This document shows, in pieces, positions 13,855 through 38,226 of a stretch of DNA of 64,000 nt. The stretch comes from Macrostomum lignano. Its lineage: Eukaryota. Each line of letters begins with the position of its first letter. Within the stretch, counting starts at the first letter, position 1. Where the stretch lies: NCBI GenBank assembly GCA_002269645.1, contig NIVC01000542.1:1-64000 (forward strand), written 5' to 3'. Below the pieces are notes generated by a model. The model had not been told where the DNA came from and did no database searches. It saw only the letters and a list, made by a program, of their open reading frames with translations. The translations under genes and the position numbers were made by a program.

Positions 13855-16028
13855 TCACTTCTTAGCCGCCGGCGGCGCCTTGCTGCCATAGAGAATGCGG
13901 TTCATCTGCGTGTTCTGCTCGTCCATCTTGGCGTTCGTCTTGTCCGTCTTCACCGACATTCGCTCCAGCTGCGAGTTCTGCCTGTCGATCTCGCCGCCCA
14001 GCCCCATGGCCAGCTGCTTCAGCCGGCCCATGCCATGCTCCATCTCGCCCAGGTTTTCGCTGAACGCCCTGTCGTAGGAGGTCTGCGGCTGCTGCCGCTG
14101 CTGCTGCTGCTGGTAGCCGGCGGCCCCCGTGGCTGCGGCGCCAAAGGATGCCGCGGGCTCCTGGCGGCGAACGTGGAATGGAACAGCTGCTGTGAGACTG
14201 GAGACTGGACGCTCAGCAGTTCTCACCATTGAGACACTCAGCAGTCTCCCCATTGAGACACTCGGCAGTCTCCCCATTGAGACACTCAGCAGTCTCCCCA
14301 TTGAGACACTCAGCAGTCTCCCCATTGAGACACTCAGTCTCCCCATTGAGACACTCAGCAGTCTCCCCATTGAGACACTCAGTCTCCCCATTGAGACGCT
14401 CAGCAGTTCTCACCATTGAGACACTCAGCAGTCTCCCCATTGAGACACTCGGCAGTCTCCCCATTGAGACACTCAGCAGTCTCACCATTGAGACACTCAG
14501 CAGTCTCCCCATTGAGACACTCAGCAGTCTCACCATTGAGACACTCAGCAGTCTCACCATTGAGACACTCAGCAGTCTCACCATTGAGACACTCAGCAGT
14601 CTCACCATTGAGACACTCAGCAGTCTCACCATTGAGACACTCAGCAGTCTCACCATTGAGACACTCAGCAGTCTCACCATTGAGACACTCAGCAGTCTCC
14701 CCATTGAGACACTCAGTCTCCCCATTGAGACACTCAGCAGTCTCACCATTGAGACACTCAGCAGTCTCCCCATTGAGACACTCAGCAGTCTCCCCATAGA
14801 CACTCAGCAGTCTCGCCAGAAACCCAAATCTCACATGGGACACTAATAAATTTCAATTAGAGACACAGGAAACCCGAAATCTCAAAGTCCCCAAAGCTCA
14901 CCTGGGCAGCGACTCTCCTGGCCTCGGCGGTGGAGCTGACGGCCATGGCCTTGTCAAGGCTGGCGCCGGCGGGCTCGTACTGCTGCGCTGGCTGCTGGCG
15001 CTTCTTGGCCGAGTCGCCGCGGAACCAGTTCTTGACGCCGCCGAACATCGAGCTCAGGCTATTGATGTGGCCCTGCGATTCCTTCTGGACGGCCTCGATG
15101 TGGTCCAGCTTCTCCTCTGTTCGGTTCAGCACCTCGCCCTGCCTGACCAGCTCTTGGGCGGTGTCCACGCCCATGCTCTCGCTGCTGTAAATTGACTGAA
15201 GAGCCCGCCGTTGCGTCTCCAGCTGCCGGCTTTGCGAGGCCTGCAAGCCGGCATCAAAGGTGCACAAGCACATGTAATTTGAGTCTGCAGTGTTTAACTT
15301 CTCCTAGCCTCGCATACTGATGCATTCCCCAATCACAGAAGCCTCCCCCAGTCTTCTCCTCCCTTCGCTCCGGTCGTCTTATCCTCTGTCGATTTAAAAC
15401 TCGTCTCGACTCTTATTTTTGTCCCTTGCCTGTCCCTCTCCTAGTCTTATCTACTTCCAGACTCCCTCCACCCCATCTGCCCCAGTCTCCCTCCACCCCA
15501 TCTGCCCCAGTCTCCCTCCACCCCATCTGCCCCAGTCTCCCTCCACCCCATCTGCCCCAGACTCCCTCCACCCCATCTGCCCCAGACTCCCTCCACCCCA
15601 TCTGCCCCAGACTCCCTCCATCCCATCTGCCCCAGACTCCCTCCACCCCATCTGCCCCAGTCTCCCTCCACCCCATCTGCCCCAGTCTCCCTCCACCCCA
15701 TCTGCCCCAGACTCCCTCCACCCCATCTGCCCCAGTCTCCCTCCACCCCATCTGCCCCAGTCTCCCTCCACCCCATCTGCCCCAGACTCCCTCCACCCCA
15801 TCTCGCCAGTCTTCCCACCGATCCTCCGCGGTGACAGCAGCCGCTCACCTGCACCTGCTGCTGCACAGTCGACCGGCCTTCATAGCCGTAACCGCCGCCA
15901 GGATTGTAGGAGCCGAAGCTGCCAGCCTGCCGGTCCTGCCCAGTCTCGAACGGGTTCCGGCCGCCGCCGCCGCCAAGACTAAAGGGATTTTTATCCTCTG
16001 TGTAGAACGGGTTTCTGCTGTCAGACAT
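13855..16028 (-). CDS. SNAP29: Synaptosomal-associated protein 29 (Qbc-SNARE), about 274 aa
   Basis: Exons 16028-15849, 15240-14902 and 14160-13855, all phase 0 with GT-AG introns. N-terminal NPF motifs, first SNARE helix (QRRALQSIYSSESMGVDTAQELVRQGEVL), second SNARE helix (ENLGEMEHGMGRLKQLAMGLGGEIDRQNSQL), and no palmitoylation Cys cluster. Confidence 0.88.
14205..14810. repeat. Minisatellite, 24-bp unit (ACTCAGCAGTCTCCCCATTGAGAC) with 21-bp variants, SNAP29 intron 2
   Basis: Direct reading; about 25 copies. Confidence 0.95.
15460..15805. repeat. Minisatellite, 25-bp unit (CCCCATCTGCCCCAGTCTCCCTCCA), SNAP29 intron 1
   Basis: Direct reading; about 14 copies; G-rich on the sense (minus) strand. 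Confidence 0.95.
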
Positions 16029-16469
16029 TCCTACAGCTTGTCGCTGCAAATGGCGGCAGGAGAGAAAACTATGGGGGCTCTGCCAGCAAATAAGGCTCTC
16101 TATCTCTGTTTTAAAAGTAGGCTCACACCAGAACTGCGGTAGCCCCCGCTAGTGTACATTGCCCTCTGTCTCCAGAATATCTCTGCAAACAACCTCTATA
16201 CAAATACTGGTCTATTCTGATTCTAATAATAGCACAGACGTGCTCAGTGACTAAGCCTTTCCCTACCCGTAATTACGGCCCTCTTAAAAGAGCACCTCGT
16301 GACTCAATTTCGCTATTTGCAAACTGCATGGCTAACAACCTCGTATAAAAAATTCTAATAAGTCTACGCAGCTTTCAAAAATATGAATCATCTCAAATTA
16401 GTCAGACTCCAAACCGACTTGATGAAGCTTTAATTACGAGAAGCCCAGAAGCTGCTGCGATTGCAATTT

Positions 16470-16671
16470 AAACAAAACAAAACTTGCTAAGGAGACAAAG
16501 GGGGTCAAACAGGGTGGAAATGCACGCCAAGGCTCTCGAGTGTACAGCGGCCCCCTGCCGACTACTTATTTCCAAGAGAACGAACGCCAACTTAATGGGG
16601 CCGTGTGCGGACTCGAACCCGGGTAACCTTTACACGGGAGTCGGAGGCGTTGCGGCCGAGCTGCTCGGCCC
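16470..16671 (-). mobile_element. tRNA-derived element (pseudo-tRNA or SINE head)
   Basis: Minus strand 16671-16598 reads GGGCCG...GGGTTCGAGTCC...CGGCCC. The acceptor-stem halves pair and the B-box is intact, but the T-stem and anticodon stem pair poorly. A (TTTG)-like tail lies near 16470-16485. Confidence 0.5.
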
Positions 16672-16784
16672 TCTGAGCAGGGAGAACTTTTCTTTTTTTT
16701 CAATTGGAACCCTATGACCTTTTAGATCCCAAAACAATTAAATTAAATTAAATTAAAAAAAACAATGTCCAACTGGTCCAGGTC

Positions 16785-16990
16785 TAAATCCCTAATTGAA
16801 AATCCCATAATCCAGGTGTTAAATCCCTAATTGAATATCCCATCATCCAGGTGTTAAATCCCTAATTACAGATCCCATCATCCAGGTGTTAAATCCCTAA
16901 TTACAGATCCCATCATCCAGGTGTTAAATCCCTAATTACAGATCCCATAATCCAGGTGTTAAATCCCTAATTACAGATCCCATCATACAG
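16785..16990. repeat. Minisatellite, 35-bp unit (AAATCCCTAATTACAGATCCCATCATCCAGGTGTT), about 6 copies
   Basis: Direct reading; period 35 (16821/16856). Confidence 0.9.
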
Positions 16991-17178
16991 ATGTCAATCA
17001 CTATTCAATATCCCATCATCGAGGTTTTGGGATATTCAATGACTGACACATCAATGAATGACTGCAAAATGCTTCGCGCAAATCTCTCCGATATAAACAA
17101 AGGTCACTCGGCACCGCGCAGTGACCCAGCCAAAAGGCCAGCTACATGAAAGCCAGGTCAGTGAGCAGTTCTAAGAGG

Positions 17179-20101
17179 TCATTTTTCTGTCCTGCCAGCC
17201 AGCCGCTTAGCGAAGGTTTGCGCTACGATGAGCGGGAAGGCCAGCGTGGCGTCCGAGTAGACCTTCACAGGCCGCGCGTCCAGCCGGATTTTGCCCCAGC
17301 TGACGGCCTCGTCGGGCCTGGCGCCGGAGTCGCTGCCATCGAACTCCTGGCCGGTGTTGATGAACACGGCAAAGTTGGCCCCGTTGCGCATGAGGTTGGC
17401 ATTGCAGGTGTGGTGCTTCACGACCCCGCCGCCCAGCACTATCATGCCGGTGTTGCGGGCGAACACCGCCTGGCTGTTCACCAGCCGGATGTCCTCGATG
17501 GCGTCCAGGACGAGGCCGGGACTGCGGTAGCTGTGAAAGTACAGCACGTCGCCGCACGCGCCGTCTGTGATGGACGGGCAGAACACAGGGATGCCGTTGC
17601 GGTGGCACCAGTAGAGCACCGACTCGGGGCTGTTGATCTCTCTGGAAGAATATATTGGCATTTTGCGTTTTGGCTACGTAAACAGTAGTTCAATAGCACT
17701 AATCTACATAAGTCACTCATTAGTCTCACCCATGAGTCGCTCAATAGTCTCACCCATGAGTCACTCAATAGTCTCACCCATGAGTCACTCAATAGTCTCA
17801 CCCATGAGACTATCATCCATGACAGGAATGCATAAAGGACTCAGGACAGGAATGCATAAAGGACTCAGGACAGGAATGGATAAAGGACTCAGGACAGGAA
17901 TGGATAACGGACTCAGCACAGGAATGCATAAAGGACTCAGGACAGGAATGCATAAAGGACTCAGGACAGGAATGCATAAAGGACTCAGGACAGGAATGCA
18001 TAAAGGACTCAGGACAGGAATGCATAACGGACTCAGGACAGGAATGCATAAAGGACTCAGGACAGGAATGCATAAAGGACTCAGGACAGGAATGCATGAA
18101 GAACTCAGGACAGGAATGCATGAAGGGCTCAGGACAGGAATGCATAAAGGACTCAGCACAGGAATGCATGAAGGACTCAGGACAGGAATGCATAAAGGAC
18201 TCAGGACAGGAATGCATAAGGACTCAGGACAGGAATGCATAAAGGACTCAGGACAGGAATGCATAAAGGACTCAGGACAGGAATGCATGGAGGACTCAGG
18301 ACAGGAATGCATGAAGGACTCAGGACAGGAATGCATGAAGGACTCAGGACAGGAATGCATGAAGGACTCAGGACAGGAATGCATGAAGGACTCAGGACAG
18401 GAATGCATGAAGGGCTCAGGACAGGAATGCATAAAGGACTCAGGACAGGAATGCATAAAGGACTCAGGACAGGAATGCATGAAGGACTCAGGACAGGAAT
18501 GCATGAAGGGCTCAGGACAGGAATGCATAAAGGACTCAGGACAGGAATGCATGAAGGACTCAGGACAGGAATGCATGATGGACTCAGGACAGGAATGCAT
18601 AAAGGACTCAGGACAGGAACGCATGCAAGTCTCAGTTAAGAAGAGCCCCACCTGCCTAGGCGGTGAATGAGCTTAGATGGAGTCCAGTTGATTTTCTGCT
18701 CATTCTGCTCAGCCAGCATGACGTCAAGGATGGGCACCAGCCAGGACTCGAACGCGCAGTAGTTTTTGTTCGGCACCAGCAGGTTGCCGATCCGGTTGAT
18801 GCCGGCCTGACGCAGCTGCGCGCCCGGCCAGCGATGGAAGTCGCCGATGTAGGTGGGGTGCATGCACTTGATGAGGTCCTCCTCCACGGCGCCGCCGGTG
18901 GTGACGAGCACGTCAACCAGGTTGTGCTCGACCAGGTAGCGAATTGACTCGCGTACGCCGCTGGAGATCATGTTGGACGTGAAGGCCAAGAATATGGTGC
19001 AGTTCGTGCGGGCCCGGCCGTATGGATTCGGGTTGGACACCTCCGAGTCTCCATTGGCGGCTGCGGCACCCGCGGCTTCCTCCGGCTTGGCAAACTTGCA
19101 GTCGAGCATTCGGTTGATTTCGTCTATGGCCAGCGACAGGTTGGTGCCCTGCGGGTGAATCAATCGTATCTACCTGCCGATCTACAGTATCTACCTGCTG
19201 ATCTATTTACAGTATCTAACTGCCAATCTTCTACAGCATCTACCTGCCGATCTACAGTATCTACCTGCCGATCTACAGTATCTACCTGCCGATCTACAGT
19301 ATCTACCTGCCGATCTACAGTATCTACCTGCCGATCTACAGTATCTACCTGCCGATCTACAGTATCTACCTGCCGATCTACAGTATCTACCTGCCGATCT
19401 ACTTACAGTATCTACCTGCCGATCTATTTACAGTATCTAACTGCCGATCTACAGTATCTACCTGCCGACCTATCTACAGTATCTAACTGCCGATCTACAG
19501 TATCTACCTGCCGATCTACAGTATCTACCTGCCGATCTGCGGTATCTAACTGGCCGATCTATTTACAGTATCTAACTGCCAATCTACAGTATCTACCTGC
19601 CGACCTATCTACAGTATCTAACTGCCGATCTACAGTATCTACCTGCCGATCTGCGGTATCTAACTGCCGATCTATTTACAGTATCTAACTGCCAATCTAC
19701 AGTATCTACCTGCCGACCTATCTACAGTATCTAACTGCCGATCTACAGTATCTACCTGCCGATCTGCGGTATCTAACTGCCGATCTATTTACAGTATCTA
19801 ACTGCCAATCTACAGTATCTACCTGCCGACCTATCTACAGTATCTAACCGCCCATTTAACTACTGAACTGCAGCATCTAACTACTGAACTGCAGCACCTA
19901 CAGGGTAAGTAAGCAGAAAAGGTAAACATGAAGACTTACCTGAAAGCCTGTGGTGGCAAATGATTTCATCAGTGCTTCCAGTGACAGCCCGTCAGGCGCA
20001 TTGAAGTCGTGACCCTTGACCGGCGTGTCCACGTCTTCTGGCAGCTGGCCGGACTGCATCAGCACAGCCTGCTGGCTGATCTGCGGCGGCTGCTGAGACA
20101 T
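17179..20101 (-). CDS. DHPS: Deoxyhypusine synthase, 373 aa
   Basis: Exons 20101-19940, 19148-18652 and 17641-17179 sum to 1122 nt. Family motifs: TTGFQ|[69 protein letters not shown]. Confidence 0.95.
17715..18630. repeat. Two adjacent 24-bp minisatellites in DHPS intron 2 (TAGTCTCACCCATGAGTCACTCAA about 4 copies; GACAGGAATGCATAAAGGACTCAG about 33 copies)
   Basis: Direct reading. Confidence 0.95.
19167..19845. repeat. Minisatellite, 21-bp unit (GTATCTACCTGCCGATCTACA) with length variants, DHPS intron 1
   Basis: Direct reading; about 30 copies. Confidence 0.95.
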
Positions 20102-20224
20102 GGCTGAAGTGTCCGGGGAGTGCTTGAGAATGTACTTCTTTATCAAGTATTGCAACTGTCTTCGGTTCTAGTCAAAAAATTGCTAGGCAAAATACTTTAG
20201 AATGTTTTAGCATCATTTTACAGT

Positions 20225-20750
20225 ATTACAGTGAATATAGCAGTCGTAGTAGTATTAGTAGTAGTATCAGTATTAGTAATAGTAGTAGTAGTAGTATGAG
20301 TAGTATTAGTAGTATTAGCAGTATTAGCAGCAGTAGTAGTAGTAGTAGTAGAAGTAGTAGTACTAGTAGAAGTAGTAGTAGTAGTAGTATCAGTAGTAGT
20401 AATAGTAGTAGTAGTATTAATAGCAGTAGTATTAGTAGTAGTAGTGTTAGTAGTAGTAGTAGTAGAAGTAGTAGTAGTATTAGTATCAGTAGCAGTAATA
20501 GTAGTAGTGGTATTAGTAGTATTAGTATTAGTAGTAGTAGTATTAGTATTAGTAGTAGTGGTATTAGTAGTAGTAGTATTAGTATTAGTAGTATTAGTAG
20601 TAGTAGTATTAGTAGTAGTATTAGTAGTAGTATTAATATTAGTAGTATTAGTAGTAGTAGTATTAGTAGTAGTATTAGTAGTAGTATTAGTATTAGTAGT
20701 ATTAGTAGTAGTAGTATTAGTAGTAGTATTAGTAGTAGTAGTAGTAGTAC
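20225..20750. repeat. (AGT)n microsatellite with ATT interruptions, between MFSD9-like and DHPS
   Basis: Direct reading. Confidence 0.97.
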
Positions 20751-21233
20751 TAATTGTAGTAGAATATTATTTTTACTACACATTGGCATCCACGCTCAAG
20801 AGTCCGTGCTGTACCTTGCCAGGAAAGGTGGGCAGCAAAGTAATAAAAAACAAGTAAAAAACATTTTTGATTATGTTTGTTTATATTTTTGTCAAAACGA
20901 GAGATAAACAACGGAACATTGTGATTTTGTAGATTTTGTGCGATTCTGTGCAAAATCAGATCAGGAAAGACAGCTGGAAGTGCGGGCAAAGCGCCTGGCA
21001 CTTGGAATAATGCTCATACTGGGAACCAATGAAAATCAGGAACTCAAAGTTGGATCGCATCCCTTCCTGCCGTTCCTGGTGGTTAATTAAAATTATTCTA
21101 ACAGAAAATTACGATTAAAAAATCTATACAGACTACTTGCGCTTGCAATGCAGTAGGCAGGTAGCAAATTTTATAGCTTAAAATTTCAGATAAAAACTGG
21201 GGTGAAGACTCTAAAAACTGGGGTGAAGACTCG

Positions 21234-22515
21234 TCAGCGCGACTTCCGATCCGCATCCGGACAGCCAGCGGCCAGCCGTCCTCGCCGGCTCTGCAGCCAG
21301 TTAACCGCGGGAGCCGCGGCGGCCAGCGGGCAGGCCAGGCAGACGGAGATCAGCGCTGCAGCCGGCTGGCTCGGAGCTTCGTGGCCGGGCAGCGCGGCTT
21401 CGACGCAGCCGCCGAGCAGCGGAGCGAGCAGGCGGGCCAGCGAGTTCACCGACTGCGAGGCGGCCATAGCGTCGGTCAGGGCGGCCTCGGGACAGGCGAA
21501 GGACGAGCTGACAAGCCGGCAGCGCAGCAGGGTCGGGTAGGCGTCCCTGGCCAGGCCGTTGAAGAAGCTCAGCGGGGCCTGGGCGGCGGCGAACTGTGCC
21601 AGGCTGGTGACGAGACCCGAGGAGGCCAGTGAGAGGCAGGCGGCCTGGCCGGTGGCTGCCAGCAGCACCAGGCGGTCGGGGCCGAGGCCAGTGGCCGACT
21701 GCAGCGGCCCGACGACTAGGCCGGACAGCAGGCCGGAGACGGCGCCCAGCGAGGTGGCGAGGCCCGCGCCGGCGGACGAGGCAGAGAAGCGCGAGTTCAG
21801 CGCCAGGGCGAAGTTGTGCCGGAACAGCTGAGCGGCCAGCGACATCGGCAGCTGCAGCGTCAGCAGGTCGGCCACGGCCAGCGCCGAGGAGGTCGGAGTC
21901 GGCCTAGAACTCCGACCGGATGACTTCGGCGCCACCTCGGCAGCTGGCGCTGCTGCCGACACCGCGGTCGCGATGCCGACAGTCAAAAAGCCGACGCAGG
22001 CGAGGCCGGTCACCAGGCGAAAGCCGCCAAAGTCGAAGGCGACCCCGCCGACCATGGGCCCGACGATGAAGCCGAGGGAGGACAGCGTCGAGTGCGAGCC
22101 GAGCAGACGGATCCGGCGACTTTCGCTGACGTCAGGCGACGAGGCGAGCTGCGTCCGCTGCAGAGTCTGGGTGTGCTTGAACAGAGCCGTGATGAGGCGG
22201 AGGCTGGCTAGGCTGGGGAAGTCGGGCGGCCCGAGGCCCAACGCCAGGTAGCCCGCGGCGGAGGCCACGCAGCAAAGGCTGTGGGCGTTGCGGGCGCCGA
22301 ACCGGCGAACCAGGCGGCCCTGGGAGGAGGGAGGGCGCGAATTGGGAAGCCTAACTGAGCTGGGCTGGGAATGGGAAACTGAGACCAAGACTGACAGACT
22401 CAAGAGAAACCATCGGGTAGGGTTGCTCGCTTAACAACAATCAAGCAATGAAGCAATGAAGCAATGTTGATCAAGAGAAACCAGCAGACACAGACAGGCA
22501 GGCAGGCAGGAAGGC

Positions 22516-22548
<33 letters not shown>

Positions 22549-22556
22549 GGCCGGCA

Positions 22557-22601
<45 letters not shown>

Positions 22602-23095
22602 ACAGACACAGACAGGCAGACAGACAGACAGACAGACAGGCAGGCAGGCAGGCAGGCAGACAGACAGGCAGACAGACAGACAGACAGACAGGCAGACAGA
22701 CAGACAGGCAGGCAGGCAGACAGACACAGACAGGCAGACAGACAGGCAGACAGGCAGACAGGCAGACAGACAGACAGGCAGGCAGGCAGGCAGGCAGACA
22801 GACAGACAGGCAGACAGACAGGCAGACAGACAGGCAGACAGACAGACAGGCAGATAGGCAGGCAGGCAGACAGACACAGACAGGCAGACAGACAGGCAGA
22901 CAGGCAGACAGGCAGGAAGGCAGACAGACAGACAGACAGGCAGGCAGGCAGACAGGTAGGCAGGCAGGCAGGCAGGCAGGCAGACAGACACAGACAGGCA
23001 GACAGACAGACAGACAGACAGACAGACAGGCAGGCAGGCAGGCAGGCAGACAGACAGACAGACAGGCAGACAGACAGACAGACAAACAGACAGGC

Positions 23096-23128
<33 letters not shown>

Positions 23129-23135
23129 GGCAGGC

Positions 23136-23176
<41 letters not shown>

Positions 23177-23670
23177 GGCAGACAGACAGACAGACAGACA
23201 GGCAGGCAGACAGGCAGACAGACAAACAGACAGACAGGCAGACAGACACACAGACAGACAGGCAGACAGACAGTACACAGCAAAAGACTCACGCAAATCG
23301 AGCTTGAAAAAATCTGCACAGCTCCGTACTCGGACTCTGAAAAATCAAAGTTTCCCAGTAATGTCTCACTAAGATTGAAGCAACACGAATACTACTAATA
23401 GTAGTAAAATATTCGAGTAGTTTATTGGCTTACGAAACAATCCCATGTAGAACGGAGCCATGTCGATTTGTTTCAGGTGAATGGGCAGGCAGGTGATGAC
23501 CATGCTGACGCAGAACAGGTCCTGAGCAAATTACGAGTAAATGAAGGTAAGATAAGGCCGATGAGCCACGCTACAGCGCACTTGAGCAGTGAACTCACCG
23601 CAAAGCCTGCCAGGCACAGTAGAAACTGCCGCCTGTCAGATTGCGCCAGCTCAGCGACAAATAAGCCGGC
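21234..23670 (-). CDS. MFSD9: Major facilitator superfamily transporter, MFSD9-like, about 430 aa; no genomic ATG found
   Basis: Exons 23670-23599, 23521-23434, 23336-23293 and 22319-21234 are phase-consistent (1290 nt). They give AGLFVAELAQSDRRQFLLCLAGFA|DLFCVSMVITCLPIHLKQ...GLF|QSEYGAVQIFSSSIC|GRLVRRFG...LGFIVGPMVGG, which matches the MFSD9 N-terminal pattern as I recall it (DLFGVSM...YGILQLFSS) and MFS motif C. Confidence 0.75.
22485..23275. repeat. (CAGA/CAGG)n microsatellite, MFSD9-like intron 3
   Basis: Direct reading. Confidence 0.97.
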
Positions 23671-29513: not shown

Positions 29514-29556
29514 GGCGGGCTGCAACTGCAGGACTTTGGGACATGAGCGGCTGACT

Positions 29557-29726
29557 ATCTGTCTGCCTGTCTGTCTGTCTGTCTGTCTGCCTGTCTGTCT
29601 GTCTGTCTGATTGTCTGTCTGTCTGATTGTCTGTCTGTCTGTCTGATTGTCTGTCTGTCTGTCTGATTGTCTGTCTGTCTGTCTGATTGTCTGTCTGTCT
29701 GTCTGATTGCCTGTCTGTCTGTCTGA

Positions 29727-29757
<31 letters not shown>

Positions 29758-30140
29758 ATTGTCTGTCTGTCTGTCTGATTGTCTGTCTGTCTGTCTGATT
29801 GTCTGTCTGATTGTCTGATTGTCTGTCTGATTGTCTGTCTGTGTATATGTGTCTGCCTGCCTGTCTCTGTCTGTCTGTCTGTCTGTCTGTCTGGCTGTCT
29901 GTCTGTCTGTCTGATTGTCTGTCTGTCTGTCTGATTGTCTGTCTGTCTGTCTGATTGTCTGTCTGCCTGTCTGTCTGTCTGCCTGTCTGTCTGTCTGTCT
30001 GTCTGCCTGTCTGTCTGTCTGCCTGTCTGTCTGTCGCCTGTCTGTCTGTCTGTCTGTCTGCCTGTCTGCCTGTCTGTCGCCTGTCTGTCTGTCTGCCTGT
30101 CTGTCTGTCTGCCTGTCTGTCTGTCTGCCTGTCTGTCTGT
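29557..30140. repeat. (TCTG)n microsatellite directly upstream of GBE1
   Basis: Direct reading. Confidence 0.97.
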
Positions 30141-30734
30141 GCCTTAGTGTCTACTATTGCTTCTCTACGAAAAAATAGTTCAGGCAATTTTCATTTTGTT
30201 CAGGAATAACACCAAGGCACCTATATAATCATTACACCTGTATTTAACTGTAGCACACAAGCGTATCGAAGATTAACAGTATTTATATGCAAGACAAATG
30301 CTTTCAATTAAACCTCATTTACTGAAACATTTTGGAGGTGACAAGAAATGCAAAGAAAGAAGACTATTGGGCCACACAATTACTAAGCAGTTTGTACGTT
30401 ATTGAACTACGATAAGCTGAGATGAAGGGTTGAAGGGTCATAGCATGACTGGGTTGGGTTTAAAAATGACGTTAACTTTATCTACATCCCTTGACGAAAT
30501 ATAGTTTATAATATGGATTTTTATAATACCTGATTATCTTTGGTCATGAAACTCTGAGCATGCAAGACCATCGAGATGTTTAACGATGCTTTCGTTGAAT
30601 TTCTTTATAAATATAGACTTCAAGAATGTCAGCCATTCCAGCTCGAGAATTGCAAAATTCCAAGACTTTAACGGATTTTTGTCGCTCAAATGTCACCGAC
30701 AGACTTCCAGGACCTTCGGCGCGATATATTTGTT

Positions 30735-31095
30735 TGTCTGTCCCTCTACCTGTCTGTCCGCCTATCTGTCTGTCTGTCTACCTGTCTGTCTGTCTACCTG
30801 TCTGTCCGTCTATCTGTCTGTCCGTCTACCTGTCTGTCTGTCCGTCTACCTGTCTGTCCGCCTGTCTGTCTGTCTACCTGTCTGTCCGCCTGTCTGTCTG
30901 TCTACCTGTCTGTCCGCCTGTCTGTCTGTCTGTCTACCTGTCTGTCCGTCTACCTGTCTGTCCATCTACCTGTCTGTCCGTCTACCTGTCTGTCTACCTG
31001 TCTGTCTGTCTGTCTATCTACCTGTCTCTCTCTCTGTCTATCTACCTGTCTCTGTATATCTACCTGTCTCTCTGTATATCTACCTGTCTGTCTTT
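30735..31095. repeat. TCTG/TCTACC-derived degenerate microsatellite downstream of the RPP25-like gene
   Basis: Direct reading. Confidence 0.9.
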
Positions 31096-31163
31096 GTGAA
31101 TAACTCCGATTTAGCGATTCAGATAGACCCAAGCAAGCTCGGTGAGTCATCCATGATTTCCAA

Positions 31164-33335
31164 TTATTTCTCCTCGCCGCTTGGCGCCTCCCGCTTGGCG
31201 CTCAGCAGCAGCTTGGCGCCCTTCCTGGCCTTGACCTTGGTCACGTGACGCTTTGCCGGATTGCTGACCGGCGCGGCGCGCTGCCGGCCGGCCTCAGCTG
31301 GCAGCACGCTGCTCACGAAGTGAGCGGCAAAGTCCGAGCCGGCCGGCAGCGGACTAGCCGAGGCGGGCAGCTCCAGGCGGGACAGCAGGCAGCGAATTGC
31401 CGGGACCTCGCGGACCGCCTGCGGTGGTGACGAATAGCAACATGTGGCTGGCTGTGTAACTTGCCATTGTTGACTGGACAGGGTTATCAGATATTGCTCG
31501 TTAATGCTTGTGTTGTATTGCTCAATCGAGTTTAAAGAGTAATGCTCACTCGTGTCCAAAGGGTATCTATCGCTCACTCGTGTCCAAAGGGTATCTATCG
31601 CTTACTCGTGTCCAAAGGGTATCTATCGCTCACTCGTGTCCAAAGGGTATCTATCGCTCACTCGTGTCCAAAGGGTATCTATCGCTCACTCGTGTCCAAA
31701 GGGTATTTATCGCTCACTCGTGTCCAGAGGGTATTTATCGCTCACTCGTGTCCAAAGGGTATTTATCGCTCACTCGTGTTCAAATGGTATTTATCGCTCA
31801 CTCGTGTCCAAAGGGTATTTATCGCTCACTCGTGTCCAAAGGGTATTTATCGCTCACTCGTGTCCAAAGGGTATCTATTGCTCACTCGTGTTCAAAGGGT
31901 ATTTATTGCTCACTCGTGTCCAAAGGGTATCTATCGCTCACTCGTGTCCAAAGGGTATCTATCGCTCACTCGTGTCCAAAGGGTATTTATCGCTCACTCG
32001 TGTCCAGAGGGTATTTATCGCTCACTCGTGTCCAAAGGGTATTTATCGCTCACTCGTGTTCAAATGGTATTTATCGCTCACTCGTGTCCAAAGGGTATTT
32101 ATCGCTCACTCGTGTCCAAAGGGTATTTATCGCTCACTCGTGTCCAAAGGGTATCTATCGCTCACTCGTGTCCAAAGGGTATCTATCGCTCACTCGTGTC
32201 CAAAGGGTATTTATCGCTCACTCGTGTCCAAAGGGTATCTATCGCTCACTCGTGTCCAAAGGGTATTTATCGCTCACTCGTGTCCAAAGGGTATCTATCG
32301 CTCACTCGTGTCCAAAGGGTATTTATCGCTCACTCGTGTCCAGAGGGTATTTATCGCTCACTCGTGTCCAAAGGGTATTTATCGCTCACTCGTGTTCAAA
32401 TGGTATTTATCGCTCACTCGTGTCCAAAGGGTATTTATCGCTCACTCGTGTCCAAAGGGTATTTATCGCTCACTCGTGTCCAAAGGGTATCTATTGCTCA
32501 CTCGTGTTCAAAGGGTATTTATTGCTCACTCGTGTCCAAAGGGTATCTATCGCTCACTCGTGTCCAAAGGGTATCTATCGCTCACTCGTGTCCAAGGGGT
32601 ATCTATTGCTCACTCGTGTTCAAAGGGTATTTATTGCTCACTCGTGTTCAAAGGGTAGTTTACTGCCCATTTCGAATCTAAAGGTATTGAAGTTGACAAC
32701 AAAGGAGAATTAATGAAATGACATGACATGAAATGACTTGACATGAAATGACATGACACGAAATGACATAAAAAGACATGACATGGCATGAAATGACATG
32801 ACATGAAATGACATATGACATGAAATGACATATGACATGAAATGACTTGACATGACATGACACGAAATGGCATGAAATGGACGATACAAACGAACAACGG
32901 ACAGACGCAACCGACCTGCAGCCGGTCCAGCCCCGGCAGCTTCGGCTCGTAGAACTGGCGCATCTTCTGGTAGAACAGGCAGTTCGCCTGGTGCAGCTGC
33001 AGGCCACGGCTGTCGCACCTTCGCTTGGTCATCTCTGAGCAGGAGATCGCCTTCTCCAAGGCGTCTCCGTCCCCAGTCCACAGCACCTGGTCGATCGGGT
33101 GCAGCTTCGGCTTGGACTTGACATCCGCGTCAGCGTTGCCTAGCAACTGAGCCACCGCGTAGTCGACCAGACGGCCAGCCTTGCTGCCGGGCTTCACCTG
33201 CATCAGCAGGCAGAAGCGCCGCCCGCTGTCGGCTGAATCGGCCACGCCGCTGTCCGAACTCAGCACCGGCAGCTGGCCGGGAATGTCCGGTGGCTCGCTG
33301 ATGTGCACCGTCTCGCCAATGTTGTAGTGCTCCAT
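31164..33335 (-). CDS. RPP25L: Alba-domain protein, RNase P/MRP subunit p25-like, 224 aa
   Basis: Exons 33335-32916 and 31418-31164, phase 0. Alba/Rpp25-type segments MQVKPGSK, VLWTGDGDALEKAISCSEMTKRR, LHQ and FYEPKLPGLDRL|...VPAIRCLLS; basic C-terminal tail. Confidence 0.8.
31545..32655. repeat. Minisatellite, 28-bp unit (ATCGCTCACTCGTGTCCAAAGGGTAT[C/T]T), about 40 copies, RPP25-like intron
   Basis: Period 28 (31561/31589). Confidence 0.97.
32710..32880. repeat. (CATGA/AATGA)n pentamer repeat, RPP25-like intron
   Basis: Direct reading. Confidence 0.9.
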
Positions 33336-33484
33336 CGAGGTGAAAAGGCAGTTGCGGAGCTGCGGACTGAGCAGAGATTTGGAGACTCCCGATTTTGAAT
33401 CCGCTGAATTTCGGTGCTAAATTTAAATCTACTTGGCAACTGAGCGTTCACTGTCCTGTGCCCTGCCTTTTCCACTGCGGCAAT

Positions 33485-33890
33485 TTCTGTCTCATACTGT
33501 CCTGTCCACCGCTACATGCCTTCCTGTCTCATACTGTCCTGTCCACCGCTACATTCCTTCCTGTCCCATAATGTCCTGTCCACCGCTACAATCCATCTTG
33601 TCTCATACTGTCCTGTCCACCGCTACAATCCATCTTGTCTCATACTGTCCTGTCCACCGCTACAATCCTTCCTGTCCCATACTGTCCTGTCCACCGCTAC
33701 AATCCATCTTGTCTCATACTGTCCTGTCCACCGCTACAATCCTTCTTGTCTCATACTGTCCTGTTCACCGCTACAATCCTTCCTGTCCCATACTGTCCTG
33801 TCGACCGCTACAATCCTTCCTGTCCCATACTGTCCTGTCCACCGCTACAATCCTTCCTGTCCCATACTGTCCTGTCCACCGCTACAATCT
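33485..33890. repeat. Minisatellite, 37-bp unit (TACTGTCCTGTCCACCGCTACAATCCTTCCTGTCCCA), about 11 copies
   Basis: Period 37 (33791/33828). Confidence 0.93.
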
Positions 33891-34779
33891 CATCAGTGAT
33901 ATTGTCCAATACTTAGCTGGAGTTGCAGAACAATAAAAAACGCAGAGCCCAGCAAGGTGCAAGAGCTGGTGCCAATCTGTCTGAATATATTCCAAGATAC
34001 TAAAAGCTAAACTCGTATGCAAGAGCAGGAAAAGAAATGAAATAAAATATTTAATTAGCAAAATAAGCAGACGCAGCATTGGGGAAACCAACTGGCGGCA
34101 GATGCAGCTTTCCAATCGGTTTGCAGAATCCGGCAGTCAGCTGATCATGAGAGAGAGTCAGAGTCAGCAATAGTGTGTGCGCCAACAGCGGATTACAGGT
34201 AAAGGATTAAGCCTAATTAGTAGCATCATATCTCAAGACGTATACAATACATTTAGTTTATAAACAGATTAAGGCAGCCCAAACTGATGTGCGCAGGTAA
34301 TGGAAAGTTTAGTAAGCTGATTGGGGCTGTTTAACCCCGAGTGCAGTCGGTGCTGAGCTCTCATATCTCTGGTGCCAAAATGTGCCAACCAATCAGCGAA
34401 TCCGGCGAAGGGAACAAAGCAGGACATCAAACTGTTTATTGGCGGAGAATATGATAGGGTAATTTATGGAAATAACATGGAACAATCATGTACTCTGAGC
34501 CTTGCAGCTCAGATACATCGACATGGGAGCAGCAAAAAATAGAATAGCCTTCTGTCTGGCGCTGAGCTTATGAGACTACAGACCTTAAACTCGTATATAA
34601 GCTTGCCAGCGCTAAAAAAGGGCTTAAGTATATGCGAAATAACTGCTAATATAGTAAAATGAGTAACAGCCAGTCGCTTGTAGTCCTAGGCTCGAATCGC
34701 TCTCAGTCTGTTCCAACTTCACCCCACATGCTAGTGCAAAGAATTGAGAGAAATTATATATTGTATTATATATCCCCTG

Positions 34780-35045
34780 CAGTCTGACAGATCCCAGTTA
34801 GTAGAATTATCCCCTGCAGTCTGACAGATCCCAATTAGTAGAATTATCCCCTGCAGTGTGACAGATCCCAAAGTAGAATTATCCCCTGCAGTGTGACAGA
34901 TCCCAAAGTAGAATTATCCCCTGCAGTGTGACAGATCCCAAAGTAGAATTATCCCCTGCAGTCTGAAAGATCCCAAAGTAGAATTATCCCCTGCAGTCTG
35001 ACAGATCCCAAAGTAAAATTATCCCCTGCAGTCTGACAGATCCCA
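34780..35045. repeat. Minisatellite, about 35-bp unit (ATCCCCTGCAGTCTGACAGATCCCAAAGTAGAATT), about 7 copies
   Basis: Period 35 (34881/34916). Confidence 0.92.
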
Positions 35046-35644
35046 AAGCATCAATAAATCCCCACAAAAAGACCAATCCAAGAACTTCAAGAACTTATTT
35101 AAGGGCTTACAGAGTCAGGCTACCCATGGAGGTCAATAATTAATCACCAAAGGTAACAATCAAATTAAACGCGCAATTAAGACAAAAGTACAAGGATCAA
35201 GGATCAGCCACCGAAGTGGTTCCATAGCGGAACTCGTAGGCATTAAGCAAAGGGATTAGGGAGAGTTACAAACATGTAAATAAACAGTAAAAAGCATTTG
35301 CAATGCAAAGACAGTCTCTTAGATTTGGAATTCCAGTATAAAAAGCAAATGGGCTACAAAATGACGAAAGCAGTTACATTACAGCAAATTATACAATAGC
35401 CGTCAGCTCAGCTGAGCAATGAAAACAGATTGATTTCACAGGTGAATAACCCCCGACCACATCGACCGCAGGTGAATAAAAAAACATACCCAATCACTTC
35501 AAAAGTTCTTCAATTCAAAAAGTAACATTGCAGTTCCTTCGGTTTTTCTCCAGATGAAGAAAAATCTGTCTAAAAAAATCTTGTATTTCTACTTCAAGTA
35601 GAAAAGTTGATAAAATTCTATTATTATTCTTCTTTTTATACGCG

Positions 35645-35818
35645 CAATATTCTAATACTTCTACTGCAAGTAGAATAGTGGATACAATTCTATTTTTATT
35701 ATCAATTTTATAAGTGCAATATTCTCATATTTCTACTGCAAGTAGAATTGTGGATACAATTCTATTTTTATTATCAATTTTATAAGTGCAATATTCTCAC
35801 ATTTCTACTGCAAGTAGA
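35645..35818. repeat. About 70-bp AT-rich tandem duplication (about 2.5 copies)
   Basis: TTCTACTGCAAGTAGAA...GGATACAATTCTATTTTTATTATCAATTTTATAAGTGCAATATTCTCA recurs. Confidence 0.8.
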
Positions 35819-35891
35819 CATTAATGGATATCACCAGCGAGAGTCAGTCGGCAAAATCGCCATTGGCATGCTGGGCTAGATATCAAGTCTC

Positions 35892-38226
35892 CTACACTGA
35901 CTGAGTCGGGGGCTTCGGTGGACTCTTCAAGTCGTCGACATCGTAGACGTGAAACCAGGGCGAGGCGCTGCTGTGCGTGAGGAAATAATCCTTGAAATTC
36001 TTGAAGACGCCCTGGTTGAAGGGGCTCTTGAGCACCTTCGGCATGCTGGTCTGGAAGTGGGCGTAGCGGAAAGAATTAAATCGCTCGTTGGTTGTCATGT
36101 TGACGCACAGCATCTGCCACAGCTGGCTTAGCAACAGCATAGCAACCCAGAATAGGTACAGCGAGTCGAGGCAAGCGCAGAAGAATGCCCAGGTTGAGCA
36201 GATCGGAGTCCTGGTGAAAAGAGCCTTGAGCCCCACGGTGTCCCAGTCCAGGCTGCAGGAGCTGTCCGGGTGGTACACGTAGGACAGGAACATCTTCAGG
36301 AACATGGAGGTGCCGAGCACCACGCCGGTGAGGTAGCCAACGAAGGTGCGGTGGTTGGCCACGCCTACGCAGTTGTACACCCAGGGGCAGTGGTGGTCCA
36401 TGCGGGCCACACAGCGGCCGCACATGTCGCAGTGCTTGGACCGGAGCGGCTTCTGGATGAGACAGGTGGAGCAGAAGTTATCGAAGCTGGCCGATGGATC
36501 CTCGCAGGTGCGCACGATGGACTGCACGCGGGCGGTCTTGTCGATCTTCAGGAAGCCGGGGTCCCGCACAGCGCAGCGCCAATGAAAGTAGAACATGCCG
36601 GATATGACGGTGGTGAACAGCACAATGTCCCCATAGCTATTGTAGGGGAACATCAGCAGCACGCAGGTAGACGTCAGGATCACCTCGGAGCCCACGGCCA
36701 GCCCGAACGGCAGCAGCATGGGGTAGCGCAGGTCCAGGCACTTCCGGCTGAACACCAGGCGGAAGAACACGGCCAGGCCGACTAGTAGCGCCAGCTTCAG
36801 CACGTAGGAGATGGCGGCGTGGAAGATGAGGCCAGCGCAGGCCAGCAGGAGGCTGGGCACCGCCAGCATGCACCAGCGCCGGTTCTCCCTGGTGGCCAGC
36901 GACCGGAAGAAGCCGCCAGCGCTAGCCGACGAGTCGCGCAGCATCCCCCGGTCCGACATCATCTCCTTGAGCCGTTCGGCCAGCCAGCGCATTTTCTTCT
37001 GCTGCAGAATCTGCACGGGCGTCTCGCCGTTGGCGTTGATGGCCGTCCAGTCGACGCCGGCGCGGTCCAGGCAGCCGAGAACGATCTGGTTGCCGCCCAG
37101 AGCAGCAAAGTGCGCCGGCGTGTTGCCGCTGTTCGGCTCGGACGCGTTCGGGTTGGCGTCAAAGGCCAGCAGCACCCGGGTGGCGTCGGGCTGCAGCACC
37201 CTCAGCGCCGTCCACATGAGGGCCGTCATGCCTTTGCAGTCGCGCAGGTTGGGGTCGGCGCCCTTGGCCAGCAGGTAGGCCAGGATGTGCGTGTAGCCGA
37301 ACTGGGCAGCCAGGTGCAGGCAGGCGAGGCCCTCAGCGTCCGTCAGCAGCGGATTGGCGCCCATCCGCATCAGCAAACAGCAGGCAGACAGGTTGCCTTG
37401 GCGACAGGCCCAGTGCAGAGGGGTGCCCTGCGGTCATCAATGGCATTTCAGATAAGAAACGTAAAGAACAATTACGGAAATTACCCGATGCAAACGGCAC
37501 CAAGGCCAAGAAAGCAGCCCAGAGTCACTTGCATCACCTCAGAGTCGCTGCAGGTAACACAGGTAAAATAGGAATACGAGATGTCACGGCCGGTACAAGT
37601 CGCCTAAGTCGTAAGGCGTTTTTTACTGTCTGCGACTCAGAACCGACTCTGGGGCAACGCAAGTGACTCTGAGCACTTCTATAGTGACTCTTGGGCCGTA
37701 GAGTCGTATCTGAGACTATAATAGCTAAGACAGATTATGAATGAGTAATTCCCATATCTCTCACGACCCGCTGCCCCAGACCCCTATCCTTCCCAAGCCA
37801 GACCTGCAGATCGCCACCGGGACGGTCAACAATGGCACCGTGGTTGACCAGCATCTGCATGATCTCCAGCCTGTTGTTGATGGCGGCCCAGTGCAGCGGC
37901 GAAACGCCCTGACTGTCCAGCGTGTTGGCATCGAAGCCGCTGTTGAGCAGCTCGCGAACTCTTGGCACAACTCCGTACTGACAGGCCTTGACCATGTCCC
38001 AGTTGCTGGTGTCCTGTTGTACCTGCTGCTGCTGCTGTTGTTGCTGCTGGGTCTGCATCCGGTAGGCCGGGTCCACAGGATAGGCCTTGCCCTCCGAGTC
38101 CATGGGGATCGGAGCTGCGGCAGCTGCGGCTGCGGCGGCCATGGCGCCGGGTGTCATGCCGGCGAACGGGTCGTGGCCTCCGTGGCTGTGACCGTGACCG
38201 TGATCGTGACTGTGACCGTGGTGCAT
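35892..38226 (-). CDS. ZDHHC17: Ankyrin-repeat DHHC palmitoyltransferase (HIP14/ZDHHC17/13 family), 652 aa
   Basis: Exons 38226-37804 and 37427-35892, phase 0, 1959 nt. Ankyrin repeats (SPLHWAAINN, TPLHWACRQG, CLHLAAQFG, TALMW, TPAHFAA), TM segments, DHHC-CRD KPLRSKHCDMCGRCVARMDHHCPWVYNCVG, TTNE motif and SPFNQG. Confidence 0.95.

What the first reader, a model, noticed from the sequence alone, without database searches (positions are those of the whole stretch)
13855..38226. Six unrelated housekeeping genes in one co-oriented, operon-like train
Seen: ZDHHC17, RPP25-like, GBE1, MFSD9-like, DHPS and SNAP29 all lie on the minus strand, 1.1-2.6 kb apart, and much of each spacer is tandem repeat. 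Each start has an AG acceptor just upstream: CTTCAG|CC-ATG (DHPS), CTGTAG|GA-ATG (SNAP29), TTGCAG|6 nt-ATG (GBE1), CCGCAG|24 nt-ATG (RPP25-like) and ATTCAG|18 nt-ATG (ZDHHC17). Known: flatworms and nematodes resolve polycistronic pre-mRNA by spliced-leader (SL) trans-splicing. Inference: one promoter upstream of 38.3 kb drives a cluster of about 25 kb linking palmitoylation, RNA processing, glycogen synthesis, transport, eIF5A hypusination and membrane fusion.
Basis: partly seen in the sequence, partly recalled or inferred. Interest (0 to 1): 0.75.

Follow-up and report, generated by a model that had tools for sequence, protein, structure and literature searches.

The report
Flatworm spliced-leader operon cluster, already annotated
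Six unrelated conserved genes of the flatworm Macrostomum lignano lie head-to-tail and are most likely made from long multi-gene transcripts cut up by spliced-leader trans-splicing, a gene arrangement already published for this species and already reflected in this locus's public annotation.

Summary
The window is bases 1-64000 of Macrostomum lignano contig NIVC01000542.1 (assembly Mlig_3_7). The six minus-strand genes are real: ZDHHC17, an Alba/RPP25-like gene, GBE1, an MFS transporter, DHPS and a SNAP29-like gene. They lie 1.1-2.5 kb apart, and 22-57% of each spacer is tandem repeat. The operon reading is largely right but not new. GenBank locus tags come from a pipeline that names genes after the RNA-seq "transcriptional unit" (TU) they were cut from. 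ZDHHC17 and GBE1 share the prefix Mlig003792, although the g1 tag for the window's ZDHHC17 is inferred. MFS, DHPS and SNAP29 share Mlig033358. The 5'-partial annotated CDSs of ZDHHC17, Alba, GBE1 and SNAP29 begin within 0-2 nt of an AG, as expected at spliced-leader (SL) sites. Four of six genes carry the published trans-acceptor motif [T/C]TNCAG, against 6% of random ATGs. No TU joins GBE1 to MFS in any of three assembly copies, so one promoter for all six is unproven. A bare AG upstream means nothing, because 87% of ATGs have one. Repeat-inflated operon spacers in this species were described in 2021. The MFS gene has no genomic start codon and probably uses the AUG that ends the SL. Interest is low.

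The parts
35892..38244 (-). ZDHHC17/HIP14-type palmitoyltransferase. Exons 38244-37804 and 37427-35892, ATG at 38226. The trans-splice acceptor ATTCAG ends at 38245.
   Evidence: Pfam Ank and DHHC domains. 100% identical to P0001, BOX15_Mlig003792g1. P0001 begins LQRQSAM, the first codon after ATTCAG.
33367..35891 (-). Spacer ZDHHC17 to Alba: 2525 nt, 36% tandem repeat (37-, 35- and 72-bp units).
   Evidence: The total is 2525, 4019 and 5004 nt in the three copies, but the non-repeat core stays at 1.58-1.61 kb.
31164..33366 (-). Alba-domain, RPP25-like gene. Exons 33366-32916 and 31418-31164, ATG at 33335. The inferred acceptor GCTCAG ends at 33367. The 1497-nt intron holds the ATGAC repeat and the 28-bp x40 array.
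   Evidence: Pfam Alba. Best PDB match is RNase P p25, E=0.002. The model follows the annotated duplicates PAA48604.1 and PAA79118.1. The gene is not called in this contig in GenBank.
29520..31163 (-). Spacer Alba to GBE1: 1644 nt, 57% tandem repeat ((TCTG)n-type arrays).
   Evidence: The non-repeat core is 0.68-0.70 kb in all three copies.
26102..29519 (-). GBE1, 1,4-alpha-glucan branching enzyme. Exons 29519-29005, 28479-28035, 27515-26698 and 26396-26102, ATG at 29513. The acceptor TTGCAG ends at 29520, and a second acceptor CTGCAG lies 6 nt upstream.
   Evidence: Pfam CBM_48, Alpha-amylase and Alpha-amylase_C. The 690-aa model exactly matches PAA81261.1, BOX15_Mlig003792g2. The CDS starts right after TTGCAG. 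Copy 3 uses CTGCAG.
23671..26101 (-). Spacer GBE1 to MFS: 2431 nt, 40% tandem repeat. This is the only junction never bridged by a shared TU prefix.
   Evidence: There are 11 sense-strand GTGAG sites in the 24-bp array.
21234..23670 (-). MFS transporter. Exons 23670 (annotated 23661)-23599, 23521-23434, 23336-23293 and 22319-21234. There is no in-frame genomic ATG before TM1. The candidate acceptor CTTCAG ends at 23671 and is in frame.
   Evidence: The 426-aa model exactly matches PAA81260.1, BOX15_Mlig033358g8. Pfam MFS_1. The ORF upstream has no ATG. TM1 is conserved in homologues.
20104..21233 (-). Spacer MFS to DHPS: 1130 nt, 50% tandem repeat ((TAG)n-like).
   Evidence: The non-repeat core is 0.56-0.59 kb.
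17179..20103 (-). DHPS, deoxyhypusine synthase. Exons 20103-19940, 19148-18652 and 17641-17179, ATG at 20101. The acceptor CTTCAG ends at 20104. Both introns are filled with 21- and 24-bp arrays.
   Evidence: The 373-aa model is identical to PAA81259.1, BOX15_Mlig033358g9.
16044..17178 (-). Spacer DHPS to SNAP29: 1135 nt, 22% tandem repeat.
   Evidence: An older gene model (UniRef A0A1I8H433, from an earlier assembly) fuses DHPS and SNAP29 through this spacer.
13855..16043 (-). SNAP29-like Qbc-SNARE gene. Exons 16043 or 16036-15849, 15240-14902 and 14160-13855, ATG at 16028. There are two candidate acceptors: TTGCAG ending at 16044 and ACAAG ending at 16037.
   Evidence: The 276-aa model exactly matches PAA81258.1, BOX15_Mlig033358g10. 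PDB hits to SNAP25 and SNAP29. Copy 3 protein begins RQAVGMS, the window copy VGMS.
38245..51739 (.). AT-rich region upstream of the train. GenBank calls no gene in 38245-48244; 48245-51739 was not covered by any annotation lookup. It must contain the outron and promoter of the first unit. It holds a mariner-like element at about 41408-42765.
   Evidence: No called gene in L002 positions 1-10000. GC 35-42%. Transposase domains. 33-bp inverted ends.

Best explanation
This is a Macrostomum lignano operon cluster resolved by the spliced leader (SL). RNA polymerase II makes long precursors that cover several genes: at least ZDHHC17-Alba-GBE1 as one unit and MFS-DHPS-SNAP29 as another, and possibly all six together. 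Each upstream cistron is cleaved and polyadenylated. Each downstream cistron receives the capped 35-nt SL (ending in AUG) at a 3' splice acceptor 2-31 nt upstream of its own ATG, or directly in frame with the ORF for MFS, which has no ATG. The kilobase-scale spacers are short unique intercistronic cores (about 0.6-1.6 kb including the 3'UTR) inflated by fast-evolving tandem arrays, as already described for this species. Shown here: gene identities, gene order and strand, exon models, spacer make-up, acceptor motifs, agreement of annotated transcript starts with AG sites, and shared TU-derived locus tags. Inferred: actual SL addition at each site, co-transcription, the number of promoters, and use of the SL AUG as the MFS start codon.
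For: (1) Organism and contig were identified and the window coordinates equal the contig coordinates. (2) Published biology: one SL, 30% of genes trans-spliced, 15% in operons, acceptor motif [T/C]TNCAG, repeat-adjusted intercistronic peak near 100 bp with a 1-kb cut-off, operons of up to 9 genes (PMC8629364). (3) Annotation method: TUs assembled from RNA-seq, clustered at 95% and given a shared prefix, then cut into genes at SL-read peaks and poly(A) sites; for example, TU Mlig030697.1 yields genes .g1 and .g2 (PMC5730564). (4) Tags at this locus: GBE1 is Mlig003792g2, and the Mlig003792 prefix also covers the ZDHHC17 copies (g1, g4) and Alba (g5). MFS, DHPS and SNAP29 are Mlig033358g8, g9 and g10, and a second copy carries g2, g4 and g6. 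(5) The 5'-partial CDSs start 0-2 nt after an AG in ZDHHC17, Alba, GBE1 (two neighbouring AGs in different copies) and SNAP29 (two AGs). By my estimate, 4 of 5 partial CDSs doing so by chance has a probability of about 0.005. (6) [T/C]TNCAG lies within 24 nt of the start in DHPS, GBE1, MFS and SNAP29, against 6% of all ATGs, a binomial probability of about 2e-4. (7) In three assembly copies the spacers differ up to 2-fold in length while the non-repeat cores stay constant, matching the published picture of repeat-inflated operon spacers. (8) A chimeric DHPS-SNAP29 gene model exists in an older annotation. Such chimeras are treated as traces of polycistronic precursors in PMC12582326. (9) All six genes have human homologues, the class enriched among SL-spliced genes.
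Against: No reads could be inspected, so SL addition and co-transcription rest on locus-tag semantics and annotated CDS starts. The g1 tag for the window's own ZDHHC17 is inferred, because P0001 has two accessions and one displayed name. The GenBank records carry no UTRs, so true intercistronic distances are unknown. For ZDHHC17 to Alba and GBE1 to MFS the non-repeat distance (1.6 and 1.45 kb including the 3'UTR) may exceed the published 1-kb operon cut-off. TU prefixes are split differently in the other two copies; in copy 2, ZDHHC17, Alba and GBE1 each have a separate prefix. The MFS annotated start is not next to an AG and differs between copies. Canonical AATAAA is absent from three spacers. 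StringTie-type assemblies can merge neighbouring same-strand genes through read-through transcription.
Confidence: 0.75

Rival explanations
1. There are six independent genes, each with its own promoter in the preceding spacer. Each makes a monocistronic pre-mRNA whose outron is replaced by the spliced leader (SL). The shared TU prefixes would reflect read-through transcription or assembly merging.
For: About 60% of SL-spliced genes in this species are not in operons. The spacers keep 0.56-1.6 kb of unique sequence, enough for a promoter. TU prefixes are fragmented in copies 2 and 3. The raw spacers are 10-25 times the roughly 100-bp mode of operonic distances.
Against: Shared TU prefixes in the window cover ZDHHC17-GBE1 and MFS-DHPS-SNAP29, and a second copy repeats MFS-DHPS-SNAP29. 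The authors state that TUs tend to break in repeat-rich operon spacers, so fragmentation is expected. Three spacers are under 1 kb after repeat subtraction even with the 3'UTR included. Six of six genes on one strand has a chance probability of about 0.03.
Confidence: 0.2
2. One reading: one promoter upstream of 38.3 kb drives a single precursor of about 24.4 kb covering all six genes.
For: All six genes are co-oriented with no intervening gene. Every gene, MFS included, has a plausible acceptor. MFS has no ATG of its own and so depends on splicing to something upstream. Operons of up to 9 genes are reported. TUs are known to break at repeats.
Against: No TU prefix bridges GBE1 and MFS in any of three copies. 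That spacer has about 1.4 kb of unique sequence and 11 consensus-like GTGAG donors on the sense strand. If transcribed, these would compete with SL addition at the MFS acceptor. The MFS annotated 5' end looks like a TU end rather than an SL site.
Confidence: 0.3
3. The co-orientation is chance, the genes are conventionally transcribed and capped, and the AGs are irrelevant or belong to cis-spliced 5'UTR exons.
For: 87% of ATGs have an AG within 30 nt upstream. A 6-gene same-strand run has a chance probability of about 0.03.
Against: The annotated 5'-partial CDSs start at AG sites in 4 genes. The trans-acceptor motif is enriched. The annotation pipeline places such boundaries from SL reads. No upstream 5'UTR exons are annotated.
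Confidence: 0.04

Closest known systems
Macrostomum lignano operons / multi-gene transcriptional units (Wudarski et al. 2017, PMC5730564; Ustyantsev & Berezikov 2021, PMC8629364)
   Same: Same species and assembly. One 35-nt spliced leader ending in AUG. Conserved, functionally unrelated genes. Acceptor motif [T/C]TNCAG. Intercistronic regions inflated by tandem repeats. Locus tags that group these genes into TUs.
   Different: Nothing in kind. With six genes it would sit in the rare upper tail (75% of operons have 2 genes, 18% have 3, the maximum is 9). Two spacers may exceed the authors' 1-kb repeat-adjusted cut-off.
Caenorhabditis elegans SL2-type operons
   Same: A polycistronic Pol II precursor. 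The upstream gene's 3' end formation is coupled to trans-splicing of the downstream gene. The genes are functionally unrelated and broadly expressed. Operons hold 2-8 genes.
   Different: C. elegans uses a dedicated SL2 for downstream genes and spacers of about 100 nt. M. lignano has a single SL, and here the raw spacers are 1.1-2.5 kb, rich in tandem repeats.
Operons of parasitic flatworms (Schistosoma, cestodes; Protasio 2012 as cited; PMC12582326)
   Same: A flatworm SL ending in AUG, SL-resolved polycistrons, and chimeric gene models as traces of precursors.
   Different: Candidate operons there are defined by spacers of 300 bp or less (median 99 bp in S. mansoni). Conservation of this particular gene set could not be tested.
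SL 3'-terminal AUG as initiator methionine (Cheng et al. 2006, J Biol Chem 281:733, as cited in PMC9851317)
   Same: The MFS ORF has no genomic ATG before its first transmembrane helix, and an in-frame CTTCAG acceptor would place the SL AUG 3 codons before the annotated start.
   Different: It is not shown here that this acceptor is used. The annotated 5' end lies 9 nt downstream of it, and an unannotated upstream exon is not excluded.

Membership tests
M. lignano SL-resolved operon (criteria of PMC8629364) | Immediately adjacent genes on the same strand with no opposite-strand gene between them | tested here: met
   GenBank gene calls plus the Alba model show six consecutive minus-strand genes. 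The next gene downstream is convergent, at 8342-11801 on the plus strand.
M. lignano SL-resolved operon (criteria of PMC8629364) | Downstream genes are SL trans-spliced (SL-containing reads at the 5' end) | tested here: inconclusive
   The evidence is indirect only. The 5'-partial CDSs begin 0-2 nt after an AG for ZDHHC17, Alba, GBE1 and SNAP29. DHPS is uninformative because its CDS is complete. The MFS start is not at an AG. No reads were available.
M. lignano SL-resolved operon (criteria of PMC8629364) | Repeat-adjusted intergenic distance under 1 kb | tested here: inconclusive
   Upper bounds (stop to acceptor, minus TRF-covered bases) are 702, 563 and 886 nt for Alba-GBE1, MFS-DHPS and DHPS-SNAP29, which meet the criterion. 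For ZDHHC17-Alba and GBE1-MFS they are 1609 and 1455 nt, which depends on the unknown 3'UTR length and on interspersed repeats.
M. lignano SL-resolved operon (criteria of PMC8629364) | A precursor transcript (transcriptional unit) spans several genes | tested here: met
   The locus-tag prefixes Mlig003792 (ZDHHC17, Alba, GBE1) and Mlig033358 (MFS, DHPS, SNAP29) show this, and the naming rule is documented. It is not met for the GBE1-MFS junction.
M. lignano SL-resolved operon (criteria of PMC8629364) | One promoter per operon, with no internal transcription start | not testable with these tools
   This needs RAMPAGE, CAGE or chromatin data, and no eukaryotic promoter model was available.
C. 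elegans-type (SL2) operon | A specialised SL for downstream cistrons and a spacer of about 100 nt | tested here: not met
   The species has a single SL. The raw spacers are 1130-2525 nt. The mechanism is analogous, but this is not a member of that type.
SL-AUG-initiated ORF (Cheng et al. 2006 type), for the MFS gene | No in-frame genomic ATG upstream of essential coding sequence, with an acceptor in frame with the ORF | tested here: met
   The ORF is open from 23853 with no ATG. The first Met lies after the conserved TM1. CTTCAG|GCC GGC TTA TTT is in frame.
SL-AUG-initiated ORF (Cheng et al. 2006 type), for the MFS gene | The SL is actually joined at that acceptor | not testable with these tools
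   No reads were available. The annotated starts (F or V codon, copy-dependent) do not abut an AG.

The most novel reading that the evidence does not exclude
All six genes form one operon of about 24.4 kb driven from the AT-rich region upstream of 38.3 kb, which would put it among the largest in this animal. Its intercistronic regions tolerate kilobase-scale, rapidly changing tandem arrays, including arrays carrying consensus 5' splice sites. One cistron (MFS) has no start codon in the genome and obtains it only from the spliced leader.
Probability: 0.25. Interest if true: 0.4.

Novelty: already known. Interest (0 to 1): 0.2.

Why it matters
It matters little beyond confirmation. Spliced-leader operons with repeat-inflated spacers are published for M. 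lignano, and this locus is already annotated as multi-gene transcriptional units. The locus could still serve as a compact test case for three questions. How much repeat expansion can an intercistronic region tolerate? Do donor-bearing repeats interfere with SL addition? Is an ATG-less gene translated from the SL AUG? All three can be tested in a flatworm where transgenesis works.

Tried and rejected
(1) I looked for direct transcript evidence. The protein collection holds no Logan or transcriptome contigs for these M. lignano proteins; the clusters contain only NCBI and UniRef entries, so no SL-bearing cDNA could be read.

(2) I searched paper text and supplements for the locus tags and found nothing.

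(3) I tried synteny in another species. The closest non-Macrostomum ZDHHC17 hit sits on a 7.8-kb ENA contig with unrelated neighbours. The 59%-identical M. lignano paralogue is UniRef-only, with no contig. Conservation of the gene order outside recent duplicates is therefore untested.

(4) I looked for poly(A) signals. AATAAA/ATTAAA is absent from three of five spacers, so 3' ends could not be placed.

(5) I searched the window for an SL RNA gene or any Rfam family and found none.

(6) I looked for dispersed repeats in the unique spacer cores. None is shared within the window, and genome-wide repeat status is unknown.

I worked around this with homology hits and exact cluster look-ups.

(8) Brute-force intron enumeration was too ambiguous or too slow. 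I replaced it with constrained models, which exact matches to GenBank proteins then verified.

Full report
**What the window is.** The 494-aa ORF at 35892-37376(-) is 100% identical to a GenBank protein of the free-living flatworm Macrostomum lignano. The locus returned for that protein aligns to the window at 100% with identical coordinates. The window is therefore bases 1-64000 of contig NIVC01000542.1 of assembly Mlig_3_7, GCA_002269645.1. Two further copies of the whole region exist in the assembly: NIVC01004105.1 (copy 2) and NIVC01000652.1 (copy 3). They are about 97-99% identical in unique sequence. This fits the known duplicated large chromosome of the sequenced line.

**Checking the observation.** All six genes are real and lie on the minus strand.
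- Pfam and PDB comparisons support ZDHHC17 (Ank and DHHC domains), GBE1 (CBM_48, alpha-amylase, Alpha-amylase_C) and DHPS (DS domain).
- They also support an MFS_1 transporter and an Alba-domain protein. The Alba protein's only PDB relatives are RNase P p25, weakly at E=0.002.
- The sixth gene encodes a SNAP25-family protein with two SNARE motifs and N-terminal NPF motifs, i.e. SNAP29-like.
- 'MFSD9-like' could not be confirmed. The protein is divergent and has only 7 distant relatives.

I rebuilt the exon models and verified four of them by exact identity to GenBank proteins:
- GBE1, 690 aa, PAA81261.1
- MFS, 426 aa, PAA81260.1
- DHPS, 373 aa, PAA81259.1
- SNAP29, 276 aa, PAA81258.1

The Alba gene is not called on this contig. 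It is intact when modelled on its annotated duplicates. The submitters removed transcripts overlapping repeat annotations before deposition, which may explain its absence.

Two corrections follow from the models. DHPS begins at 20101 and has three exons. The Alba gene ends at 31164, because a 1.5-kb intron contains the 28-bp x40 array.

The stop-to-next-acceptor spacers are 2525, 1644, 2431, 1130 and 1135 nt, and 36, 57, 40, 50 and 22% of them is tandem repeat. The next gene downstream is convergent. Upstream, GenBank calls no gene for at least 10 kb. That stretch is AT-rich and carries a mariner-like element.

**Are the acceptors meaningful?** An AG within 30 nt upstream occurs at 87% of all ATGs in the window, so that criterion alone is worthless. 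The published M. lignano trans-acceptor motif [T/C]TNCAG occurs at only 6% of ATGs. Here it is present at DHPS (CTTCAG), GBE1 (TTGCAG), MFS (CTTCAG) and SNAP29 (TTGCAG). By my binomial estimate, 4 of 6 has a probability of about 2e-4.

The GenBank CDSs give stronger evidence. The submitters defined mature mRNA boundaries by mapping SL-containing reads and poly(A) reads, then ran TransDecoder. A 5'-partial CDS therefore starts at the first full codon of the transcript.
- The ZDHHC17 protein begins LQRQSAM, the codon right after ATTCAG.
- GBE1 begins PAM, right after TTGCAG. In copy 3 it begins one base after the neighbouring CTGCAG.
- Alba begins one base after GCTCAG.
- SNAP29 begins right after TTGCAG in copy 3, and two bases after ACAAG in the other two copies.

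The SNAP29 (CTGTAG) and RPP25-like (CCGCAG) sites lie inside the annotated transcripts. The MFS start does not abut an AG and differs between copies, so it looks like an assembly end rather than an SL site.

**Evidence for polycistronic transcription.**
- *How the tags are made.* In the annotation, RNA-seq assemblies called transcriptional units (TUs) were clustered at 95% identity and given a shared name prefix. Many TUs were recognised as trans-splicing precursors holding several genes, and they were cut into genes named prefix.gN. The published example is TU Mlig030697.1, with genes .g1 and .g2.
- *Tags on the window's contig.* GBE1 is Mlig003792g2. ZDHHC17 carries the same prefix, but its number (g1) is inferred, because the protein has two accessions and only one displayed name.
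- *Copy 3.* Its ZDHHC17 and Alba are Mlig003792g4 and g5.
- *The second prefix.* MFS, DHPS and SNAP29 are Mlig033358g8, g9 and g10 in the window, and g2, g4 and g6 in copy 2.
- *What follows.* Unrelated genes can share a prefix only if some assembled transcript spans them. At least one TU therefore runs from ZDHHC17 to GBE1, and at least one runs from MFS to SNAP29.
- *Older chimera.* An older annotation contains a chimeric DHPS-SNAP29 protein that enters SNAP29 at the TTGCAG acceptor. Such chimeras are used as traces of polycistronic precursors in a recent flatworm study.

**Spacers.** Ustyantsev and Berezikov (2021) showed that distances between trans-spliced neighbours in this species collapse to a peak near 100 bp once repeats are subtracted. 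They used 1 kb as the operon cut-off. Across the three copies of this locus, spacer lengths vary up to 2-fold: 2525, 4019 and 5004 nt for ZDHHC17 to Alba, and 1130, 1051 and 715 nt for MFS to DHPS. The non-repeat cores stay constant at about 1.6, 0.7, 1.45, 0.57 and 0.9 kb, 3'UTRs included. Three junctions meet the published cut-off outright. Two depend on the unknown 3'UTR length. Canonical poly(A) signals did not locate the 3' ends.

**One operon or two?** No TU prefix bridges GBE1 and MFS in any copy. That spacer keeps about 1.4 kb of unique sequence. Its 24-bp array carries 11 sense-strand GTGAG donor-like sites, which would compete with SL addition if transcribed. On the other side, the authors note that TUs break in repeat-rich operon spacers, and MFS cannot be a self-sufficient first exon. 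Its ORF has no in-frame ATG upstream of the first transmembrane helix, which is conserved in homologues. An in-frame CTTCAG acceptor with a good pyrimidine tract lies 9 nt before the annotated start. The SL ends in AUG, and flatworm SL AUGs are known to act as initiators for some mRNAs (Cheng et al. 2006, as cited in PMC9851317). The simplest reading is that MFS is trans-spliced and starts at the SL AUG, giving M-AGLFVAEL.... I put a single six-gene operon at about 0.25-0.3. I put 'operonic, with at least two multi-gene units' at about 0.75. Six independent promoters get about 0.2.

**Comparison and novelty.** This works like C. elegans operons but is not of that type. The species has no dedicated SL2, and the spacers are kilobases rather than about 100 nt. 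It fits the already described M. lignano operon class, repeat-inflated spacers included, and the locus's own locus tags already encode the multi-gene units. Six genes would be rare: 75% of operons have two genes, 18% have three, and the maximum is nine. That is still within the published range. The finding is therefore a correct reading of known biology, with some wrong details and an unproven single promoter.

**Limits.** No RNA reads, UTR annotation, cap-site data or other Macrostomum genomes were reachable. Everything about actual SL addition and co-transcription rests on the annotation. Synteny outside recent duplicates is untested.

Noticed in passing
window 114-10432 (+), gene call 8342-11801 (+): A 345-bp unit is repeated 30 times at 99% identity and encodes Ephrin_rec_like/TNFR-type cysteine-rich repeats. 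Only the last part is annotated (1063 aa), and it converges on SNAP29. Further upstream the ORFs are only about 325 aa long and spaced about 1033 nt apart, so either the array has periodic frame breaks or the assembly has errors.
   Followed up: partly
window 51740-53980 (-): An intact 746-aa ORF begins with a hydrophobic, signal-peptide-like N-terminus (judged by eye, not tested) and has 16 Ephrin_rec_like repeats, built on a 99-bp x12.5 coding array. No gene with this product is on record.
   Followed up: partly
window ~41408-42765: A mariner/Tc1-like element has 33-bp inverted ends (94% identical) and a 321-aa ORF (41632-42597, minus strand) with HTH_48 and DDE_3 domains. It sits in the gene-free region upstream of ZDHHC17.
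   Followed up: partly
L004 position 9999-10000 (copy 3, NIVC01000652.1), equivalent to window 38245-38246: In copy 3 the ZDHHC17 acceptor reads ATTCTG instead of ATTCAG, yet the annotated CDS starts at the same base. Either that copy has lost its acceptor and the annotation reflects multi-mapped reads, or this is an assembly error.
   Followed up: no
window 29520-29531 and 16037-16049: Tandem alternative acceptors: CTGCAG and TTGCAG lie 6 nt apart before GBE1, and TTGCAG and ACAAG lie 7 nt apart before SNAP29. Annotated transcript starts use different ones in different copies.
   Followed up: partly
window 23661-23853 (-): The MFS ORF has no in-frame ATG upstream of its conserved first transmembrane helix. 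An in-frame CTTCAG acceptor at 23671-23676 would let the spliced-leader AUG serve as the start codon.
   Followed up: partly
window 38244, 29519, 23670, 16043: The terminal AUG of the spliced leader would be in frame with the main ORF, with no intervening stop, at ZDHHC17 (+6 codons), GBE1 (+2 codons, in the window copy only; copy 2 has one extra C), MFS and the TTGCAG site of SNAP29 (+5 codons). At DHPS it opens a 15-codon overlapping out-of-frame uORF. Four of six in frame is not significant (p about 0.1).
   Followed up: partly
window 24939-25556 (-): The 24-bp tandem unit in the GBE1-MFS spacer reads CACAGTGAGTTATCCCATCTCTGC on the sense strand. It carries both a consensus-like 5' splice site (GTGAGT) and a pyrimidine tract followed by CAG. 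That gives 11 donor-like sites upstream of the MFS acceptor.
   Followed up: no
window 13855-38244 and loci L001, L004, L005, L006: Nearly every intron and spacer carries its own tandem array (periods 4-72 bp). Array lengths differ up to 2-fold or more between the three assembly copies, while flanking unique sequence is 97-99% identical. The arrays therefore turn over very fast, unless some are collapsed in the assembly.
   Followed up: partly
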